DNA of 64,000 bases, taken from the IMG/VR virus record IMGVR_UViG_3300021520_000002, positions 62,001 through 126,000 of that record, one strand, 5' to 3'. The position numbers and the translations under genes are program-made. This document shows positions 545-57,150 of the stretch, one piece after another (the stretch's first letter is position 1; the number at the start of each line of letters is the position of its first letter). The notes beneath the pieces were generated by a model, which had not been told where the DNA came from, made no database searches, and saw only the letters and a program-made list of their open reading frames with translations.

Positions 545-1948
545 ATGGCAAGAAAAAAAGAAGATACAAATAGAAGCGCAACTAATAGTTTTGATTCATC
601 TTCATTTGAAGATGCATCAACAGAACAAGCTGAAAAGTTAGGAACAGCATTTGAAAGTATAATTACAAGTAAGTATGGTTTTGCAAGAGCACCGGAACCA
701 TATCTAACTCCATTTGGTATTCAGCATCTTGATACATTAATTGGTGGAGGAATAACATCTTCTGCTCCAGTTATGTTAACATCAACACCTGAAACTGGAA
801 AGAGTACTTTAGCATTTCAACTTTCATCTATATTTCAAATATTGTATCCTAATTCAATGGTTGTTTATTTAGATATTGAAACAGCTGCTAATAAATCAAA
901 TAAGAATAATGCAATGTCAAGAGTTAATATATTTAAAATTGATGAGAAGAGATTTAGATATGAACCTTTGGTTATTAATATAAATCAGTTGTTTGAATTG
1001 ATTGAACAATTATGTGCTGTTAAACAGTTGTTTGAAGAGAAATCTCAGAAAGAGTTTAAAGTGTTAATTATTTGGGATAGTATAGCGGCAACTCCATCTT
1101 CTAAAGTTGAAGATGCAGAAGATCCGAATAAAATTATTGGTGTTAAAGCACGTCAGCTTACATTCGCTCTCGAGAAATATTTGCCGATGATGGCATTCAA
1201 TAGAATAACATTTCTAGCTATTGATCAGGTTCGTGCAAATCTTAATATTGATCCTTATGCTCAAAAAGAAAAATCTGTTGGAGTATTTAAAGACTATCGT
1301 GCCGCTACATCTATATCTGCATTAAATCATAGAGTTGCTCAATGGTTATTTTTATCCAGAAAAGCAGCTATTACACCAGATGATGGATTAGGCATTAATG
1401 GTTGGTATATGAGTATGTATGTTGAGAAGAATAAAATTGCTCCATCTCAGGAAGCTATTACTTGTGTTTTTGATAAGAGAAATGGTCTTCATAAATTTTG
1501 GAGTGAGTATACATTTCTTAGTGAGATGATGCCATCTGAAAAGAAGTATTATAAAACTGAAGATAAAATACCATTTCCATTATCTATTAAAAAATCTGGT
1601 CCTCAAGTATATCTTGAATTTATAGATCCAACATCAGGAAGTGTTGCATACACATCTGAAAAAATGTATAAGAAGAATATGAATAAAGCTTATATTGAAG
1701 ATAGTACTTTTAGACAAGCTTTTGATTATGTAACAAGTATGGCTGTTGAACTTAGAATTAGACAAGGACTTTTTAGGGAAAGTGAAACTGCTATTAATAT
1801 AAGTTCTGAAGTAATTGAAGAATTTGAAGCTGAAAGTCTTTCAGATGATAATTTTGATAAACCAAAAATTTCAGTTGCTGAACAAGTTGCCGCTACAATA
1901 CCTTCTATCGATGGAGAACAAGAAGCTACTTATGAATCAATATTTTAA
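545..1948 (+). CDS. uvsX: RecA/UvsX-like recombinase
   Basis: TPFGIQHLDTLIGGGI, Walker A STPETGKST, YLDIE, Walker B IIWDSIAA, IDQVR, VEKNKIAP. Confidence 0.88.
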   Translation: MARKKEDTNRSATNSFDSSSFEDASTEQAEKLGTAFESIITSKYGFARAPEPYLTPFGIQHLDTLIGGGITSSAPVMLTSTPETGKSTLAFQLSSIFQILYPNSMVVYLDIETAANKSNKNNAMSRVNIFKIDEKRFRYEPLVININQLFELIEQLCAVKQLFEEKSQKEFKVLIIWDSIAATPSSKVEDAEDPNKIIGVKARQLTFALEKYLPMMAFNRITFLAIDQVRANLNIDPYAQKEKSVGVFKDYRAATSISALNHRVAQWLFLSRKAAITPDDGLGINGWYMSMYVEKNKIAPSQEAITCVFDKRNGLHKFWSEYTFLSEMMPSEKKYYKTEDKIPFPLSIKKSGPQVYLEFIDPTSGSVAYTSEKMYKKNMNKAYIEDSTFRQAFDYVTSMAVELRIRQGLFRESETAINISSEVIEEFEAESLSDDNFDKPKISVAEQVAATIPSIDGEQEATYESIF

Positions 1949-1962
1949 TATTGGAGACTATT

Positions 1963-2931
1963 ATGGATGTTAGATTTTTAAAAGAGATTAGTGAAGCGTA
2001 TATTATAGACACTGAACTTGATGCTTTTCCGGAACAAATATATAATGAATTATATGATATTACTAAGTTCATTCAGAAAAATGATCCGGAATTATATAAT
2101 GAACTTTATGAATCAACTAGAATTACTCAACAGAAAATTTTGAAAACATATCTTGATTATGTTTTTGAATTAAATGTTGTTTCTGAAGAGATTGAAGATC
2201 AAGAATTATTGCTTGAAGAACCTATAACTATGGCTGTAACTGGTGGTTTAGGATTACTTTTGGCATATTTATATCGAAAGGGATTGACTAAAGGTATAAT
2301 GAAAATTGGTGCTGAAGCTGGAAAAGTATTTCAATATATTGGGAATTTTCTAACTAAAAAAGGTAAATATATGCAACTTAGATATTCTATAATTCAAGAG
2401 AATTATAAAAAATGTTATCTAAAATGTGATATTGAAAAACCTTCAGATATTAGTGCTCTTTCATATGGTTCTATTTCTTCATCTTCAACATTTTCATCAA
2501 AAAAAACTTCAGATCAAGCTGAATGTCTTAGAGAATGTTATCTTGATAATTTAATTGATGTGATTTGTTTACATATGGAAGGATATTTTGCTTGTTTAAA
2601 ACGGACTGGAAATTCTGCCGCTTTACAAAATACTGAAACAGATGATGTTATGAAAATGATATCGTCAACTAATATTGCAACAGCGTGTTCTGATTATTAT
2701 GATTTGGCGAGAGAATCTCTTGGAAATTTTTATAAAGTTTTAGATTTAGTTTATAATGATATGAGTGAAGATGATAATAAATTAGAATGGATGAATAAGT
2801 TTAGAGGGAGATTATTTCAAACTCGTCAACAAGTTCAGAAATATAGTAATAATGAATTACAAAGATATGAATCTTCTGGTAATTCAAAACCTGATTTTAG
2901 AGGTAAAAGACCTGATTTCAGAAGGTCTTAA
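1963..2931 (+). CDS. hypothetical protein, possibly a processed virion/head protein with one hydrophobic segment
   Basis: ORF track start 1951 (TTG); ATG 1963 follows GGAG. Acidic N-terminus ending LLLEE, then AVTGGLGLLLAYLY, then a Cys-rich helical region. Confidence 0.6.
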   Translation: MDVRFLKEISEAYIIDTELDAFPEQIYNELYDITKFIQKNDPELYNELYESTRITQQKILKTYLDYVFELNVVSEEIEDQELLLEEPITMAVTGGLGLLLAYLYRKGLTKGIMKIGAEAGKVFQYIGNFLTKKGKYMQLRYSIIQENYKKCYLKCDIEKPSDISALSYGSISSSSTFSSKKTSDQAECLRECYLDNLIDVICLHMEGYFACLKRTGNSAALQNTETDDVMKMISSTNIATACSDYYDLARESLGNFYKVLDLVYNDMSEDDNKLEWMNKFRGRLFQTRQQVQKYSNNELQRYESSGNSKPDFRGKRPDFRRS

Positions 2932-52602: not shown

Positions 52603-53569
52603 TTTCTCCTTTCATTCTTTCTCTGATAGTTGTATATATCATATGATTGATCATGAAATAAACTTCTTGAATAATTTCAGTTATAAGTGATGGTATTCGA
52701 ATGGTATAATTACTATTATTCACTAGATTTATACTTGGATTTTGTCCAGCAAAAGTAATAATTTTACATTTTACACGTTGCCCTTCAAGAGCAGCTCGTA
52801 ATATATTTTTTGATTTGCCGCTAGTTGAAAGTAATAATAAAACATCTTTTTTATCTAAAAAAGGTATAAGTAGATTATGAAAAACATATTCATAAGATAC
52901 ATCATTACCCATTGAAGTTACAGCTGAAATGTTTTCTGTAAGAGCGATTGCTGGAAGTCCTATACACATAAATTCACCAGCTAGATGAATCGCATCTGCA
53001 GCACTTCCTCCATTACCACATATTACTAATTTACCACCTCTTTTAAAAGATTTAAATATAACATCAATAATTTCTTTAATTATACCATTATGTTTTTCAT
53101 TTTCATCTAATAATTTTATTGCTTCACAGTGAATTTTCATATATCCATTTTCAGGAAGACATGATTTTTGAATATTACTAATAATATTAGTTGTTGAATA
53201 TTTATCAAGTCTTGGAATAGCAACAACTTCACCACTCCATTCTTTTACAAGTTCTTCTTCAATCTCTAATCTTCCTTCCCAATCTCCACCTTTAACAATA
53301 ATATCTGGTTTTATTCTTTTTATTAAATTATCAGGTCTTTCTTCATTAAATACAATAACATTATCGACATATCTTGTATGTAATAACATTACTTCTCTAT
53401 CTACCTGATTTCTAAAAGGTTTTCTTCCTCTTAGTTTCTCGAATGATGAATCACTATTTAAACCAACAATTAATTCATCACCAAGTGATTTAGCTTTTCT
53501 AAGTAAATGAAGGTGACCAGGATGTAATATTTCAAAACATCCATTAGTGAATACTGTTTTTGGTTTCAT
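52589..53569 (-). CDS. hldC-gmhA: fusion of heptose-1-phosphate adenylyltransferase (HldC/RfaE2) and phosphoheptose isomerase (GmhA)
   Basis: N-half TNGCFEILHPGH, GLNSDSS, VKGGDW, YSTT; C-half CGNGGSAADAIH, GND, STSGKS, IQE. Confidence 0.92.
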   Translation of the reverse strand: MKPKTVFTNGCFEILHPGHLHLLRKAKSLGDELIVGLNSDSSFEKLRGRKPFRNQVDREVMLLHTRYVDNVIVFNEERPDNLIKRIKPDIIVKGGDWEGRLEIEEELVKEWSGEVVAIPRLDKYSTTNIISNIQKSCLPENGYMKIHCEAIKLLDENEKHNGIIKEIIDVIFKSFKRGGKLVICGNGGSAADAIHLAGEFMCIGLPAIALTENISAVTSMGNDVSYEYVFHNLLIPFLDKKDVLLLLSTSGKSKNILRAALEGQRVKCKIITFAGQNPSINLVNNSNYTIRIPSLITEIIQEVYFMINHMIYTTIRERMKGEIENG

Positions 53570-53784
53570 TTCTTTTCTCCTGGAATTTCACATGTAATAC
53601 TTTTTGCTCCAAAGGCTTTTTGTTCATATTTGATTAATCCTTTCACAGCTTCACAACTTTTAATAATAGATAATTCTGTTTCGTGTTCTAATAGTAATAT
53701 TTTTTCTTGATGATCATAATCTTGTTTTGAGCTACATGAAACTAATAATAAACTAATAAATATTAGTATTATATATTTTTTCAT
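53566..53784 (-). CDS. putative lipoprotein
   Basis: MKKYIILIFISLLLVSC lipobox. Confidence 0.65.
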   Translation of the reverse strand: MKKYIILIFISLLLVSCSSKQDYDHQEKILLLEHETELSIIKSCEAVKGLIKYEQKAFGAKSITCEIPGEKK

Positions 53785-54032
53785 TATTTATCCTTTATTT
53801 TGTTATAATATAAAATTAGAACTTCTAAGGCACAAGAAAGAGCTTTGTATTTTCTATCAAAACTTTTTTGTATACAACCTCCATCGAATCTCACTTCATC
53901 ATTACGCCACCAATAAACTCCTTTCATGTTCAATCTATAATCATTTTTCTTGTTAAATATATATCCAACAACTTTATGATTATATACTAATTGAGTATTT
54001 CCATTTGGTAATCTATATGTTGAAAACGTCAT
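53784..54032 (-). CDS. hypothetical protein
   Basis: Coupled ORF. Confidence 0.55.
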   Translation of the reverse strand: MTFSTYRLPNGNTQLVYNHKVVGYIFNKKNDYRLNMKGVYWWRNDEVRFDGGCIQKSFDRKYKALSCALEVLILYYNKIKDK

Positions 54033-54340
54033 TTGTTCTCCTCAAGCATTCTAACAGGTTTCCCATGAACGATGGCGTATGCTATTTCTTTTTTCGTACT
54101 TTCTCCAATGTAACCACCAACATTAATAATCAACACTTCATCAGCAAGATCTATTTTTCTGAGATGTAATTTGTCTAACATCTTTTTGACTTCTCCGTTC
54201 ATATCTATTCCTTCAATATGACCAAATAATCCAACTGTTAAAACAATTTTACCTTTTAATGTTTCTTCTTTCATTGCTTGTTCATATTCATTTTTAAATC
54301 TTGTTGAACCACAAAGACATACTATTTTGGGTCTATCCAT
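54029..54340 (-). CDS. nucleoside 2-deoxyribosyltransferase-like (NDT-fold) protein
   Basis: IVCLCGS.RF...KIDLADEVLIINVGGYIGESTKKEIAYA...GKPV. Confidence 0.7.
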   Translation of the reverse strand: MDRPKIVCLCGSTRFKNEYEQAMKEETLKGKIVLTVGLFGHIEGIDMNGEVKKMLDKLHLRKIDLADEVLIINVGGYIGESTKKEIAYAIVHGKPVRMLEENK

Positions 54341-54353
54341 TTCTCCTCCTTTC

Positions 54354-54617
54354 TCAGTATAAATCCTCAGACATTAATGTTGGTGATGCCCAAGGGTCTT
54401 TATGGTCTATCAATTGATTACACTCTACCGCTATTTTAAATGCTTCGTGTCTATCCACAAATATGTCAGCATCAGTTATAAAACCCTGTGTATACTCAGA
54501 GTGTTTAACGGGTCTATCTCCCGTTTCTTCAACTATCTTTTTTATAACATCACCATGACGTTTACCTGTCCAGACCTTACCATCACTAATCCTTTGAATT
54601 GCTGATTCTTTAATCAT
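54354..54617 (-). CDS. small phage protein (G.RH...QGF.TD...FVDR.EA..IA)
   Basis: ATG 54617 after AAGGAG (ORF track 54665 runs into the structured RNA). Confidence 0.65.
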   Translation of the reverse strand: MIKESAIQRISDGKVWTGKRHGDVIKKIVEETGDRPVKHSEYTQGFITDADIFVDRHEAFKIAVECNQLIDHKDPWASPTLMSEDLY

Positions 54618-54635
54618 AGTTTCTCCTTTAAAAAC

Positions 54636-54741
54636 AATACAGGGAATGGGGTAGCTGAGCCCCACAAGCGGGATTTTACAAGCTGCGGGCTCTTAACCCA
54701 TGCTAACCCTCGATCACTTCGCCTTATCACGTCCCTGTATT
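54636..54741 (-). ncRNA. GC-rich structured non-coding RNA of unknown class (~106 nt)
   Basis: Closing stem AATACAGGGA/TCCCTGTATT; internal GAGCCC/GGGCTC or TGGGG/CCCCA helices; GC far above the flanks. Confidence 0.55.
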
Positions 54742-54753
54742 TTTATTATTTGT

Positions 54754-54923
54754 TGGCACAGAAGATAGGGATTCAAACCCTACACGGACTGGACATTCTC
54801 ATTCTTATACGTCCTTTCTTCCTTAATCAGTACTTTATAAAAGGCATCAATCTCATATATTTCCCTTTATCATCTCCATCCTGAGATGTTCAGGATTGTG
54901 TCTACTCATTCCACCACTTCTGT
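54754..54923 (-). ncRNA. tRNA-like RNA (170 nt) with ~95-nt variable-arm insertion
   Basis: Acceptor ACAGAAG/CTTCTGT+G+CCA, Leu-type D arm GTGGAATGAGTAGACAC, stem ATCCTG/CAGGAT with loop AACATCT, T arm TAGGG-TTTGAAT-CCCTA. Confidence 0.7.
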
Positions 54924-55388
54924 GCCGTTAATTTTAATCTTCTTTTCTTATCTTACCACATTTGTGACAAGACCATTCGTGATCTTTTACAACAGTTTTC
55001 CATCTGTTATAACCACAATCACAAGGTTTAATATCATCTTTTCTTTTATAGTTTCTTATTTTTTTCTTAGGTGACCACATGTTTTCTCCTTTATTTGCCT
55101 ATTGTTTTTTTACTTACAAATCCACCTTTTCTTTCAGAACCACATTTACTAGTTGTAACTGTTATAGATTTATCTGAATTTACATATGTTTGAACTGATG
55201 CTTTATTTGTTTTTGTAACACTATCAGGTTTTCGATTAGTTACATTGTTTTTCATAATTTCTCCTTGTTAACTATCACGATTTGATAATGCTTCTTTAGC
55301 AGCTTCTACAGCAATCATAACAACTGCTGTAAGTACTGTAACGCTAACTCCTATTACAACTTGTTTTATAACATCAATTGACTCTTTT

Positions 55389-55649
55389 TTAAACCAACTC
55401 ATGTTGTTCTCCTTTATTGTAGTTTTTCATATATGGATCTATATTGTCCATAGCTTTTTGAATATTAAAACATATTTTACTTCCACAAATTGGACAATTT
55501 TTAGTTGCTCTTGTATCATAAATAATTTCACATTCAATACATAATACAGCATATCTTAATCCTATAGAACTAATTATTTGTGTATTATTTGATATAACTG
55601 AAATTTGTATGTCTTCTTTTTTAAAGAATTTATTTATGAAGTTGTTCAT
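55389..55649 (-). CDS. small zinc-ribbon protein
   Basis: CIEC...CPICGS. Confidence 0.65.
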   Translation of the reverse strand: MNNFINKFFKKEDIQISVISNNTQIISSIGLRYAVLCIECEIIYDTRATKNCPICGSKICFNIQKAMDNIDPYMKNYNKGEQHELV

Positions 55650-56398
55650 AATCTAAACTCTTGACCTTTCATGACAAATCCTTTAAATCCATCATGTTTA
55701 GCAGCAGGAAGAGGACCATCTTGATAATGACATAACCACATCTTTTTACGAATATTTTCAGGTAGTGTTAATAGTTCAGAATAATGTGCGTGAACTCCAC
55801 TTTTAAAAGGAGTTGTTTCACAGTCCTGAAAAATTAAATCTGCTGATGCATAAAAATCTTTAATCTGATTAGGATTAAACTGTGTATCTGTTGTTATGAA
55901 TATATTTTTAGTTTTAGTTCTTAATTTCAATCCAAAACATGGTCTAATACTAAATCCATCCATTATATGTACTACCTGGATAGGTGTTATTAAAATATTA
56001 TTCCAATGAACAGTTTCATTTTGACTAATAGCAATTACGTTAAAATAATCACTTAATTTCATTATCTTATTTTGAATACTTCCCAAACCACCAGATAATG
56101 TATTTTGCCATATTGATTCTTCTAAGGCTTTACTTATTAATAGATCAGGTTTAGTACAAGATGGATCAAAATATCGGCAAAAAGCTAAATATTCTAATCC
56201 ACCGGCATGATCTGCATGAAGATGTGAAATATACACTTCTGTTATATCTTTATATGACATTCCAGAATCTTTCAATGAAAATCTAATATCTGAACCTGCA
56301 TCAATTAAAAGTTTTTCTTTACCTTTAGTTAATAACATATTTGTTTGATAATTTGTCATTGAAAAAGCACTTCCACTTCCTAAGAATTTTAGTATCAT
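55646..56398 (-). CDS. MBL-fold metallohydrolase, Apyc1-like (cyclic nucleotide phosphodiesterase / RNase Z-like)
   Basis: FLGSGSAF, LIDAG, SHLHADHAGGLE, LSGGL, FQDCE, GVHAHY.ELLTLP, WLCHY. Confidence 0.8.
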   Translation of the reverse strand: MILKFLGSGSAFSMTNYQTNMLLTKGKEKLLIDAGSDIRFSLKDSGMSYKDITEVYISHLHADHAGGLEYLAFCRYFDPSCTKPDLLISKALEESIWQNTLSGGLGSIQNKIMKLSDYFNVIAISQNETVHWNNILITPIQVVHIMDGFSIRPCFGLKLRTKTKNIFITTDTQFNPNQIKDFYASADLIFQDCETTPFKSGVHAHYSELLTLPENIRKKMWLCHYQDGPLPAAKHDGFKGFVMKGQEFRL

Positions 56399-56424
56399 TT
56401 TTGTTTTTCCTTTTTAGATTTTTA

Positions 56425-56512
56425 TGGTGGCGCTGACTGGACTTGAACCAGCATGGAGAAAATCTCCGAGAGATTTTAAATCTCTTGTGTAAACCAATTC
56501 CACCACAGCGCC
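56425..56512 (-). tRNA. tRNA-Leu(TAA)
   Basis: GGCGCTG...AGAGA-TTTAAAA-TCTCT...GTTCAAGTC...CAGCGCC A CCA; long variable arm. Confidence 0.95.
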
Positions 56513-56519
56513 GATTATG

Positions 56520-56789
56520 TTAAGATTTACATTTATTTAATAGAATAATTGTTACTTTCAAAAAATCAACAAGATGATCAGCATCATATACACTTTCATA
56601 TTCAAAATCTTCTTCAGCTTCAAATATCGAAATATATTTACTATTGATAGTTTCTCTTTTTTCTTCTAATTTATCCATTTTTGAACTTTTTTGTTTATCT
56701 TCATTAAGCATTTCTAAATTTAAAACATATATTTTTTCTTCTAACATTGTTAATTCAATGATATCTTTTTTTATTTCATCTATTGTCAT
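56520..56789 (-). CDS. hypothetical protein between tRNAs
   Basis: ATG 56789 after AAGGA (ORF track 56855 overlaps tRNA-Ser). Confidence 0.55.
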   Translation of the reverse strand: MTIDEIKKDIIELTMLEEKIYVLNLEMLNEDKQKSSKMDKLEEKRETINSKYISIFEAEEDFEYESVYDADHLVDFLKVTIILLNKCKS

Positions 56790-56814
56790 TTTTATTTTCC
56801 TTTTTTGTATTATT

Positions 56815-56904
56815 TGGCGGAGAGCGTAGGATTTGAACCCACGAACCGCTTTCACGATTTCTAGTTTTCAAGACTAGCACCATCAGCCTCTCGGTCAGCT
56901 CTCC
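56815..56904 (-). tRNA. tRNA-Ser(TGA)
   Basis: GGAGAGC...CTAGT-CTTGAAA-ACTAG...GTTCAAATC...GCTCTCC G CCA; long variable arm. Confidence 0.95.
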
Positions 56905-56910
56905 ATTTAA

Positions 56911-57150
56911 TTATTTGCCGATTTTAATTTTCTCTATAATTTTACAATCCTCTAAATGACAAAAATCATCAATTCTACAATCATAGCAAACTGTTAGATT
57001 TGGACAACAATCTTCAACTATTCTAAAAACATCATTACCAAATCTACCATGTAGTTTATTTAAAATAAATGTGATCATTCTACTATTTTTAGCTGTAATA
57101 AGTTTACAATCATTACATTTCTCATCACATAAATATCTTCTATCTTTCAT
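56911..57150 (-). CDS. small Cys-rich protein
   Basis: CDEKCNDC...CCP...CYDCRIDDFCH. Confidence 0.6.
   Translation of the reverse strand: MKDRRYLCDEKCNDCKLITAKNSRMITFILNKLHGRFGNDVFRIVEDCCPNLTVCYDCRIDDFCHLEDCKIIEKIKIGK

What the first reader, a model, noticed from the sequence alone, without database searches (positions are those of the whole stretch)
54754..54923. tRNA-shaped RNA with a giant variable arm and a non-decoding anticodon loop
It has an intact acceptor stem, encoded CCA, a Leu-like D arm and a T arm. However, the anticodon arm is 6 bp with loop AACAUCU (no U33 or purine 37), and ~95 nt replace the variable arm. The insert holds a GGAC/GTCC hairpin and a mini-ORF MRLMPFIKY* (54856-54827) after AAGGGA, which may be chance. 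It lacks the G3.U70 of tmRNA. Candidates are a tRNA mimic (decoy for anticodon nucleases or synthetases), a miniature tmRNA-like RNA, or a tRNA with a non-canonical intron.
Basis: partly seen in the sequence, partly recalled or inferred. Interest (0 to 1): 0.75.

Follow-up and report, generated by a model that had tools for sequence, protein, structure and literature searches.

The report
Phage non-decoding tRNA mimic RNA
A 285-kb lake phage makes a stable 170-nt RNA shaped like a leucine-type tRNA, with a capped stem in place of an anticodon loop and a 94-nt variable arm; six smaller look-alikes in two other phage lineages suggest a small, undescribed family of tRNA mimics of unknown role.

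Summary
On the minus strand, 54754-54923 folds as a class-II (Leu-like) tRNA frame. It has a perfect 7-bp acceptor stem, U8, a Leu-type D arm, a T arm, G73 and an encoded CCA. The 'anticodon' arm is a 7-bp helix capped by ACAUC, which cannot decode. About 94 nt sit in the variable-arm position.

ARAGORN and Rfam do not call it. ARAGORN does call a tRNA once 70-75 nt of the insert are deleted (19 variants, against 0 in 160 control windows).

One lake metatranscriptome holds a 167-nt contig that equals 54756-54922 exactly and holds nothing else from 3.5 kb around it. So the unspliced RNA accumulates as a discrete species.

The closest relatives (93% nt) lack the whole 1.36-kb cassette that carries it. 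They show no decaying tRNA at that site.

I found six smaller look-alikes (90-155 nt) in two other phage lineages. All share A1-U72, a 7-bp acceptor, a 6-bp T stem and no decoding loop. Two orthologues carry a GNRA-capped 7-bp 'anticodon' stem kept by compensatory changes.

Best reading: a tRNA-processed, non-decoding tRNA mimic that acts through its acceptor/elbow half. The tmRNA and intron readings fail their tests. Function is unknown.

The parts
54754..54923 (-). The whole tRNA-shaped RNA (E0), 170 nt including the encoded CCA
   Evidence: Sequence. The minimum-energy fold gives the cloverleaf plus two extra hairpins. A metatranscriptome contig covers 54756-54922 with 0 mismatches.
54917..54923 (-). 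Acceptor stem, 5' strand (ACAGAAG); A1 pairs with U72
   Evidence: Seven Watson-Crick pairs, mean pair probability 0.98. A1-U72 is shared by all seven family members.
54898..54916 (-). U8-G9 and the Leu-type D arm (GUGG / AAUGAGUAG / ACAC)
   Evidence: 16 of 20 identical to the D arm of the phage tRNA-Leu(UAA). The D stem covaries among family members.
54878..54896 (-). Helix in the anticodon-arm position: 7 bp (AUCCUGA/UCAGGAU) capped by ACAUC; read as 6 bp the loop is AACAUCU, without U33 or a purine at 37
   Evidence: pair probability 0.73. ARAGORN reads the triplet as 'CAU' only after the insert is shortened.
54784..54877 (-). 94-nt insert in the variable-arm position. GGA at its 5' end is one of two near-equal predicted partners for UCC at its 3' end
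   Evidence: The first bases (GGAGAU) match the start of the variable stem of the phage tRNA-Leu. It is not repeated elsewhere in the genome.
54837..54870 (-). Hairpin A: 8-bp stem AUAAAGGG/CCUUUUAU with an 18-nt loop holding AUGAGAUUGAUG
   Evidence: Pair probability 0.86. The 5' strand plus loop resembles this phage's ribosome-binding sites.
54827..54856 (-). Mini-ORF MRLMPFIKY* (probably not coding)
   Evidence: Present, but no family member has a conserved peptide there.
54791..54814 (-). Hairpin B: 6-bp stem GGACGU/AUGUCC with a 12-nt loop
   Evidence: Pair probability 0.97.
54765..54783 (-). T arm with a 6-bp stem (G.U plus UAGGG/CCCUA) and loop UUUGAAU (U56 instead of C56)
   Evidence: All seven family members have a 6-bp T stem.
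54754..54764 (-). Acceptor 3' strand CUUCUGU, discriminator G73, encoded CCA
54924..54926 (-). Leader GGC, which can pair with G73-C74-C75 in the precursor
   Evidence: 10-bp terminal stem in the precursor fold.
53566..54931 (-). The 1.36-kb cassette carrying the RNA, a second structured RNA and four small genes (87, 103, 82 and 72 aa). It is absent from the closest relatives

Best explanation
It is a phage-encoded tRNA mimic that does not decode, derived from a class-II (leucine-type) tRNA.

Shown: it starts 10 nt after the stop codon of the preceding gene, and the pattern scan found nothing promoter- or terminator-like beside it. It is therefore probably co-transcribed with the small early-type genes around it. 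An unspliced RNA of about 167-170 nt accumulates, with ends within 1-2 nt of the acceptor-stem termini.

Inferred: the host tRNA-processing enzymes cut it out (RNase P at the 5' end, 3' trimming back to the encoded CCA).

Shown: the parts of a tRNA that proteins read at the 'top' are intact, namely the acceptor stem, N73-CCA, the T arm and the D/T elbow. In the relatives these parts are conserved or covary.

Shown by anatomy: the parts needed on the ribosome are disabled. The anticodon loop is replaced by a capped 7-bp helix, and the acceptor/T stack has 13 bp rather than 12.

Inferred: the RNA acts through its acceptor/elbow half. It would be bound, and possibly charged, by factors that ignore the anticodon. 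LeuRS and SerRS are the two class-II synthetases of that type. This RNA has G73 and a long variable arm, which is Ser-like. Most relatives have A73, which is Leu-like. The RNA stays off the ribosome. Its likely role is to occupy or divert a host tRNA-binding factor (a defence toxin acting on tRNA ends, or a synthetase), or to serve as a dedicated aminoacyl carrier. The variable arm is the site that expands across the family, from an 8-nt loop to 94 nt, and carries lineage-specific hairpins of unknown role.
For: Anatomy.

Specificity: 19 ARAGORN calls among deletion variants of this element, none in 160 control windows.

Expression: run X11 is a metatranscriptome from the same lake sample as DNA run X8. 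It holds one 167-nt contig equal to 54756-54922, with 0 mismatches and depth 6.5. It holds no other phage contig within 53500-57000. All sampled words of the element are present in X11.

Family: six further elements were found, E1-E6.
- E1: L082:806-960.
- E2: L093:7530-7644.
- E3: L093:7779-7890.
- E4: L082:428-519.
- E5: L082:1085-1191.
- E6: L093:7316-7405.
All have A1-U72, a 7-bp acceptor and a 6-bp T stem, and none is called by ARAGORN in its standard mode or by Rfam (intron mode calls E1; see evidence against).

Covariation:
- Five of the seven acceptor pairs differ on both sides between E0 and E1-E3.
- D-stem pairs 10-25 and 11-24, and T-stem pair 51-63, show double changes.
- E5 and E6 are nearly identical outside the 'anticodon' stem and the variable-arm loop. 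That stem keeps 7 bp and a GNRA cap through 2 double and 2 single compensatory changes.

E0 and E1 also share UGGAGAUGRUA at the start of the insert and CCAGU before the T arm.

Literature: E. coli LeuRS needs A73 and the D/T-loop tertiary contacts but not the anticodon arm or the variable arm. Changing A73 to G73 switches Leu identity to Ser. Serine identity does not depend on the anticodon (PMC9976931).
Against: - No function has been tested. Charging, RNase P cleavage and any protein partner are all inferred.
- RNA evidence comes from one run, as assembled contigs without strand information. Two other metatranscriptomes of the same study do not hold it.
- The acceptor stem (A1-U72, C2-G71) does not match the E. 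coli Ser or Leu acceptor determinants.
- The closest phage relatives do without the whole cassette, so the RNA is dispensable for that lineage.
- All 20 assemblies carrying the RNA are nearly clonal, so there is no within-lineage variation to test.
- Family members E2-E4 have poorly formed anticodon-position arms, and E4 has an acceptor mismatch. These could be decaying copies.
- Homology between E0 and the others rests on short shared motifs plus shared architecture. It could partly reflect independent descent from tRNA-Leu.
- ARAGORN in intron mode reads E1 as tRNA-Ser(UGA) with a 71-nt intron, giving a loop with U33 and a purine at 37, and 58 deletion variants of E1 read as tRNA-Leu(UAA). 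I take these as over-fits, but they leave an intron-type reading open for at least that member.
Confidence: 0.55

Rival explanations
1. It is a relic: a duplicated class-II tRNA gene that lost its anticodon loop and picked up junk in the variable arm. It is still cut out and stabilised only because the acceptor/T minihelix remains a good RNase P and exonuclease substrate. On this view it has no function of its own.
For: The closest relatives lack it. It sits in a swapped accessory cassette. Some family members (E2-E4) have degenerate central parts, and E4 has a mismatch in its acceptor stem. L082 also holds another truncated tRNA-like piece. Expression alone does not show function.
Against: All four helices of E0 are perfect. 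They differ in sequence from every tRNA of the genome, so many compensated changes must have accumulated. The unusual 6-bp T stem and A1-U72 recur in all seven elements across three phage lineages. In E5/E6 the capped stem is kept by compensatory changes and a GNRA-to-GNRA loop change, while the remainder apart from the variable-arm loop is nearly identical. That pattern points to purifying selection, not decay.
Confidence: 0.2
2. It is a tRNA gene interrupted by a non-canonical intron or insertion. The 170-nt RNA would be a precursor that is spliced to a decoding tRNA.
For: ARAGORN in intron mode reads relative E1 as tRNA-Ser(UGA) with a 71-nt intron. Deleting 64 nt from E1 gives a Leu(UAA)-like cloverleaf. 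A mature form of about 80 nt would be too short to appear as a contig.
Against: ARAGORN in intron mode finds nothing in E0. The only robust reading after deletion keeps the loop AACAUCU with A33 and C37. Rfam finds no group I or II intron and no ribozyme. 94 nt is well below the roughly 200-nt minimum for group I introns (established knowledge). The phage has no RtcB ligase gene. E5 and E6 have no insert to remove, yet still carry a tetraloop where the anticodon should be.
Confidence: 0.07
3. It is a miniature tmRNA-like hybrid. The variable-arm insert would be a tiny message (SD-like AAGGGA plus AUG, MRLMPFIKY*) delivered to ribosomes by the tRNA-like part.
For: In tmRNA, the helix leading to the message leaves the tRNA-like domain in the direction of a class-II long variable arm (PMC3985003). 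That is topologically where this insert sits. E0 and E3 both carry an SD-like run followed by AUUGAUG in a variable-arm loop. A distant relative of the phage has a true tmRNA downstream of the same MBL (Apyc1-like) gene that lies about 720 nt upstream of this RNA.
Against: G3.U70 is invariant in tmRNA (PMC3985003) but is A-U here. Rfam tmRNA does not match. D and anticodon-position helices are present where tmRNA has SmpB. The phage has no SmpB gene. The peptide has no degradation-tag ending. The ORFs differ or are absent in E1-E6. The SD-like run is buried in the stem of hairpin A.
Confidence: 0.05
4. It is a cis-acting processing signal. A tRNA-like 'punctuation mark' would make RNase P cut the polycistronic transcript, separating the upstream genes from the downstream leader and genes. 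The excised RNA would be a by-product.
For: It starts 10 nt after the stop codon of the 48-aa gene, and the pattern scan found nothing promoter- or terminator-like beside it. A second structured RNA and a gene follow directly.
Against: A minimal acceptor/T hairpin would be enough for that job. It does not explain the conserved D arm and elbow, the capped anticodon-position stem or the 94-nt insert. The relatives E1-E6 lie inside tRNA arrays, not between protein genes.
Confidence: 0.1

Closest known systems
Class-II tRNA-Leu (bacterial or phage)
   Same: Both have a 7-bp acceptor stem, U8, a Leu-type D arm (GUGG, then AAU and GUAGACAC), a T arm, a long variable region that starts GGAGA, and an encoded CCA. 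The element lies 1.5 kb from the phage tRNA-Leu(UAA).
   Different: Here the anticodon loop is replaced by a capped helix. The T stem has 6 bp, giving a 13-bp stack. The discriminator is G73 instead of A73. The variable region is 94 nt instead of about 15. tRNA detectors do not call it.
Bacteriophage T4 species 1 and 2 RNAs (RNA C, RNA D)
   Same: These are stable small RNAs (139 and 119 nt) encoded in a phage tRNA region. RNA C ends in a T arm plus a short terminal stem, with hairpins inserted between. Their function is still unknown (PMC3014915, PMC9697503).
   Different: There is no sequence similarity. RNA C has no tRNA-like D arm, an imperfect terminal stem and a 5-bp T stem. The apparent synteny with T4 e.8 is false.
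tmRNA
   Same: Both have a tRNA-like top half with a CCA end, are processed like a tRNA, and carry a large extra domain that leaves in the direction of a class-II variable arm (PMC3985003).
   Different: This RNA has no G3.U70 and no match to the tmRNA model. It has real D and anticodon-position helices, and no conserved tag frame.
tRNA-Sec and allo-tRNAs
   Same: Shared with tRNA-Sec: a 13-bp acceptor/T stack, a lengthened anticodon stem, a long variable arm and G73.
   Different: The split here is 7/6 rather than 8/5 or 9/4. The D arm is Leu-type, not a 6-bp stem with a 4-nt loop. There is no UCA anticodon and no decoding loop at all.
YrlA bacterial Y RNAs (tRNA-like domain)
   Same: Both are non-decoding RNAs that keep the D/T elbow and a tRNA-like core. 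Many YrlA RNAs have long variable loops (bioRxiv 10.1101/312249).
   Different: In YrlA the acceptor stem is a closed loop without CCA, and the RNA ends form a Ro-binding stem. Here the ends form the acceptor stem with CCA. Rfam finds no Y RNA match.

Membership tests
Canonical decoding tRNA | Recognised by tRNA gene models (ARAGORN, Rfam RF00005) | tested here: not met
   Not called by ARAGORN, with or without intron mode. No RF00005 match even at E<=10. The three neighbouring tRNAs score 51-64 bits.
Canonical decoding tRNA | 7-nt anticodon loop with U33 and a purine at 37 on a 5-bp stem | tested here: not met
   The loop is AACAUCU (A33, C37) on 6 bp, or ACAUC on 7 bp.
Canonical decoding tRNA | 7-bp acceptor stem stacked directly on a 5-bp T stem (12 bp) | tested here: not met
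   The acceptor has 7 bp, but an extra nucleotide gives a 6-bp T stem (13 bp). This holds in all seven family members.
tmRNA | G3.U70 alanine identity pair (invariant; PMC3985003) | tested here: not met
   Position 3-70 is A-U.
tmRNA | Match to the tmRNA covariance model, or an ARAGORN tmRNA call | tested here: not met
   No match. The same tools find a true tmRNA in L004 at 137 bits.
tmRNA | Tag reading frame conserved among relatives | tested here: not met
   ORFs in the inserts of E0-E6 differ in sequence and length, or are absent.
tRNA with a group I intron | Intron of about 200 nt or more with a group I core, in the anticodon loop | tested here: not met
   The insert is 94 nt, lies 3' of the anticodon-position helix, and has no Rfam intron or ribozyme hit.
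tRNA-Sec | UCA anticodon, 6-bp D stem with 4-nt loop, 8/5 or 9/4 stack | tested here: not met
   Only the 13-bp total, G73 and the long variable arm agree.
YrlA / Y RNA | Closed acceptor loop and a Ro-binding stem formed by the RNA ends | tested here: not met
   The ends form an open acceptor stem with CCA. Rfam finds no hit.
T4 RNA C / RNA D | Sequence homology to T4 rnaC or rnaD | tested here: not met
   No blastn match in 50,697 phage records. The resemblance is only a loose architectural analogy.
Proposed new family (E0-E6) | A1-U72, 7-bp acceptor, 6-bp T stem, class-II D arm, no decoding loop, located in a phage tRNA region | tested here: met
   The family was defined after the fact from 7 elements in 3 phage lineages.
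Proposed new family (E0-E6) | Aminoacylation, or binding by a tRNA-recognising protein | not testable with these tools
   Needs biochemistry.

The most novel reading that the evidence does not exclude
Some phages may carry a family of tRNA mimics built from class-II tRNAs. These are the tRNAs whose synthetases (LeuRS, SerRS) do not read the anticodon. The mimics could therefore still be charged, while a capped anticodon stem and a 13-bp acceptor/T stack keep them off EF-Tu and the ribosome. They would then act as dedicated aminoacyl carriers. Alternatively, they would act as decoys that soak up host factors attacking tRNA acceptor ends or synthetases. The expandable variable arm would serve as a payload site. 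In E0 and E3 it holds ribosome-binding-site-like hairpins, an arrangement reminiscent of a primitive tmRNA.
Probability: 0.2. Interest if true: 0.85.

Novelty: new variant of a known kind. Interest (0 to 1): 0.64.

Why it matters
Phage tRNA genes are usually explained by codon supply or by replacement of tRNAs that host defences cut. This RNA and its relatives cannot decode, yet they keep the parts of a tRNA that enzymes read at the acceptor end and the elbow. At least one of them accumulates in nature.

If they are functional, they add a new class to the short list of tRNA mimics (tmRNA, Y RNAs, viral tRNA-like structures). They may also shed light on the 50-year-old puzzle of T4 RNA C and RNA D.

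They also show that standard tRNA finders miss a kind of structured RNA in phage tRNA arrays. The variable arm tolerating 8 to 94 nt suggests a natural 'tRNA scaffold'.

Tried and rejected
Searches for homologues that found nothing:
- blastn of the locus, and of relatives' elements, against 50,697 phage records. Only an ordinary tRNA-Leu matched.
- Exact or degenerate patterns in IMG/VR. Results were empty or chance matches in coding sequence.
- Two pattern scans of GTDB genomes were empty.
- Contigs carrying close homologues of the neighbouring genes hold no related RNA: the Apyc1-like MBL gene, the 103-aa gene and the 87-aa T4_Y16D gene.
- A single-sequence covariance model run on four distant relatives' records found nothing.

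The metagenome pattern scan gave 59 loci. All except the phage's own contig and L082 were chance matches or neighbouring tRNA pairs.

Ideas tested and dropped:
- Synteny with T4 rnaC/e.8. The two 87-aa proteins are unrelated.
- Population variation. Of the 20 contigs reported to carry the RNA, the four read have no change in the RNA.
- The weaker model hits in the phage's own genome are a terminator hairpin and coding sequence.
- The repeated AUGAGA in both hairpin loops is not statistically meaningful. By my own back-of-envelope estimate, not a tool result, about 3 repeated hexamers are expected by chance in 170 nt.
- A pseudoknot between the ACAUC loop and the GAGAUG just downstream is sterically unlikely, because the linker is only 2 nt.
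- L078 'long tRNAs' are 5'-fragment duplications upstream of normal tRNAs. L034 is a tRNA-Leu-like gene with a 30-nt insertion from an unrelated record.

Not run:
- Complex prediction. A modelled synthetase-RNA complex with E. coli proteins would not discriminate between the hypotheses.

Full report
**What is there.** The window is part of a 285,572-bp virus record that recurs in freshwater lake metagenomes. Genes around the finding run on the minus strand. Read on that strand, 54923 to 54754 is a 170-nt tRNA-shaped sequence:
- acceptor ACAGAAG / CUUCUGU, 7 Watson-Crick pairs;
- U8-G9;
- D arm GUGG / AAUGAGUAG / ACAC;
- one A;
- a helix AUCCUGA / UCAGGAU capped by ACAUC;
- 94 nt of extra sequence;
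- T arm UAGGG-UUUGAAU-CCCUA;
- one extra U;
- the acceptor 3' strand, G73 and CCA.

The extra U pairs with the G before the T stem, so the T stem has 6 bp and the acceptor/T stack has 13 bp. The unconstrained minimum-energy fold reproduces this cloverleaf plus two hairpins in the insert (z = -3.65).

**Is it more than chance?**
- ARAGORN, with or without intron mode, and Rfam even at E<=10, do not call it.
- My scan for a T arm followed by a strand complementary to an upstream 7-mer found only the nine real tRNAs and this element in the whole genome.
- When 70-75 nt of the insert are deleted in silico, ARAGORN calls a class-II tRNA in 19 of 2925 variants.
- The same procedure on 160 random windows of the genome gave none.
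- The D arm is 16 of 20 identical to that of the phage tRNA-Leu(UAA) 1.5 kb upstream, and the insert begins with the same GGAGA as that tRNA's variable stem.

**Is it expressed, and in what form?** Of four runs laid on 53500-57000, the metatranscriptome X11 holds one contig of 167 nt. X11 comes from the same sample as a DNA run that holds the phage. The contig matches 54756-54922 with no mismatch, at depth 6.5. X11 holds no other contig of this phage in the 3.5 kb. All sampled words of the element are in X11.

DNA runs at low coverage give contigs with arbitrary ends. Two ends falling within 1-2 nt of the predicted acceptor termini is therefore strong evidence for a discrete, stable RNA that still contains the insert.

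Limits of this evidence:
- it comes from one run;
- it is contigs, not reads;
- there is no strand information;
- two other metatranscriptomes of the study lack it.

The RNA starts 10 nt after the stop codon of a 48-aa zinc-ribbon-like gene, and the pattern scan found nothing promoter- or terminator-like beside it. Co-transcription and tRNA-type processing are the likely route. This is inferred.

**The locus in relatives.** Contigs that are 93% identical in DNA across the neighbouring genes jump from 54931 to 53566 and carry a 60-aa ORF there instead. The RNA therefore belongs to a 1.36-kb accessory cassette, together with a second structured RNA and four small genes. One of those genes belongs to the T4_Y16D family. 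There is no ordinary or decaying tRNA at that place in the relatives. Of the 20 assemblies reported to carry the cassette, the four read have no change in the RNA.

**A family.** Direct searches for homologues mostly failed (see Tried and rejected). A degenerate D-loop-to-T-loop pattern in JGI metagenomes, filtered with my structural scanner, yielded L082. A relative of that phage is L093. A covariance model built from the first four elements then found more. Seven elements are now known:

| Element | Location | Length |
|---|---|---|
| E0 | this window | 170 nt |
| E1 | L082:806-960 | 155 nt |
| E2 | L093:7530-7644 | 115 nt |
| E3 | L093:7779-7890 | 112 nt |
| E4 | L082:428-519 | 92 nt |
| E5 | L082:1085-1191 | 107 nt |
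| E6 | L093:7316-7405 | 90 nt |

All seven lie in phage tRNA regions. In L093 the order is E6, E2, E3, tRNA-Leu(UAA), tRNA-Gln. All have A1-U72, a 7-bp acceptor, a 6-bp T stem and a class-II D arm. None is called by ARAGORN in its standard mode or by Rfam; intron mode reads E1 as a Ser tRNA with an intron.

E0 and E1 also share UGGAGAUGRUA at the start of the insert, CCAGU before the T arm, and the same T stem.

Covariation supports the frame:
- five acceptor pairs differ on both sides between E0 and E1-E3;
- D-stem pairs 10-25 and 11-24, and T-stem pair 51-63, change on both sides;
- U56 in E0 goes with GA in its D loop, where E1 has C56 and GG. This may be a 19-56 compensation, but that depends on how the D loops are aligned.

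The clearest case is E5/E6. These two orthologues are nearly identical except in the anticodon-position arm and the variable-arm loop. That arm stays a 7-bp stem capped by a GNRA tetraloop (GAAA against GCAA), through two double and two single compensatory changes. A tetraloop in place of an anticodon, kept by selection, shows that the inability to decode is a maintained feature and not damage. The variable arm is where length varies, from an 8-nt loop in E6 and 25 nt in E5 to 94 nt in E0.

**How it probably works.** Conservation falls on the acceptor stem, N73, the T arm and the D/T elbow. These are the parts read by RNase P, the CCA enzyme, synthetases and toxins that act on tRNA ends. The parts needed for decoding are replaced.

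Class-II tRNAs are the natural starting material for such a mimic:
- E. coli LeuRS needs A73 and the D/T tertiary contacts, but not the anticodon arm or the variable arm;
- serine identity rests on the variable arm and G73;
- changing A73 to G73 switches Leu identity to Ser (PMC9976931).

Five relatives (E1, E2, E4, E5, E6) have A73, E3 has U73, and E0 has G73 with a very long variable arm. A 13-bp stack is the geometry that, in tRNA-Sec, goes with rejection by EF-Tu (same review).

My best reading (0.55) is a processed, stable, non-decoding mimic that engages a tRNA-binding factor, and may be charged, while staying off the ribosome. Which factor, and to what end, is not known. The phage itself encodes no SmpB, CCA-adding enzyme or RtcB.

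**Rivals.**
- *Decaying pseudo-tRNA (0.2).* This fits the dispensable cassette and the ragged centres of E2-E4. It does not fit the perfect helices, the shared odd geometry or the E5/E6 covariation.
- *Intron-containing tRNA (0.07).* It finds no support in E0. E5 and E6 lack any insert yet still lack an anticodon.
- *Mini-tmRNA (0.05).* It fails G3.U70, the model match and ORF conservation. The position of the insert does, however, correspond to where the tmRNA body leaves its tRNA-like domain (PMC3985003).
- *Pure processing signal (0.1).* It does not explain the conserved elbow, the capped stem or the insert.

**Known relatives in kind.** The nearest precedent in phages is T4 RNA C and RNA D. 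These are stable RNAs in the tRNA cluster, and RNA C ends in a T arm. Their roles are still unknown (PMC3014915, PMC9697503). There is no sequence or detailed structural homology. I found no paper describing tRNA-shaped phage RNAs with capped anticodon stems. A large survey of viral structured RNAs mentions unspecified tRNA-like candidates (PMC10690425).

**Verdict.** The 'tRNA mimic' reading is supported, and the tmRNA and intron readings are not. It is a new variant among tRNA mimics with a small family behind it. Its function is open.

Noticed in passing
window 54632-54738 (minus strand), between the RNA and the 87-aa gene: A second, G+C-rich structured RNA of about 100 nt. It is closed by ACAGGGA/UCCCUGU and followed by a U run and the ribosome-binding site of the next gene. 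Rfam finds no match. A wastewater metatranscriptome contig (X20) carries it at about 94% identity, directly in front of a homologue of the 103-aa gene, with the 87-aa gene absent. It may be a conserved 5' leader or riboswitch-like element.
   Followed up: partly
G000:C1:232054-232128 (outside the window): The phage encodes a tRNA with anticodon CUA, an amber suppressor that ARAGORN labels 'Pyl'. This may indicate TAG recoding in part of the genome.
   Followed up: no
window 55646-56398 (minus strand): A 250-aa MBL-fold protein whose close homologues (93% and 74-75% identical) carry precomputed hits to Pfam Anti-Pycsar_Apyc1 (PF23023). It is probably a cyclic-nucleotide phosphodiesterase that counters the Pycsar defence system. 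It belongs to a very large family, which some sources annotate as ribonuclease BN/Z.
   Followed up: partly
window 54029-54340 (minus strand): A 103-aa protein with at least 7,995 homologues at E<=1e-5 (the top 120 listed are 63-81% identical) and no Pfam family. It occurs in phages and bacteria, often beside nucleotide-metabolism genes (dCTP deaminase, RNase T, phosphoribosyltransferase), and is sometimes fused into proteins of 170-180 aa.
   Followed up: partly
L004:5544-5918: A distant relative of the phage (223-kb record) encodes a full tmRNA (137 bits, tag AKHIAFPAPQVWAARAAA) about 800 nt downstream of its Apyc1-like gene.
   Followed up: partly
L082, reverse complement about 2230-2295: A truncated tRNA-like piece of about 62 nt with a G3.U70 acceptor stem, D and T arms, but almost no anticodon arm. 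It lies between E1 and E4 and no tool calls it.
   Followed up: no
L078:829-1033 and 1800-2003 (reverse complement coordinates): In another phage tRNA array, two tRNAs are each preceded by a copy of their own first 25 nt or so and by about 130 nt of unrelated structured sequence. These look like scars of insertion or duplication at tRNA genes.
   Followed up: no
window 55095-55400: A second small indel relative to the 93% relatives: two ORFs of 44 and 54 aa are present here and absent there.
   Followed up: no
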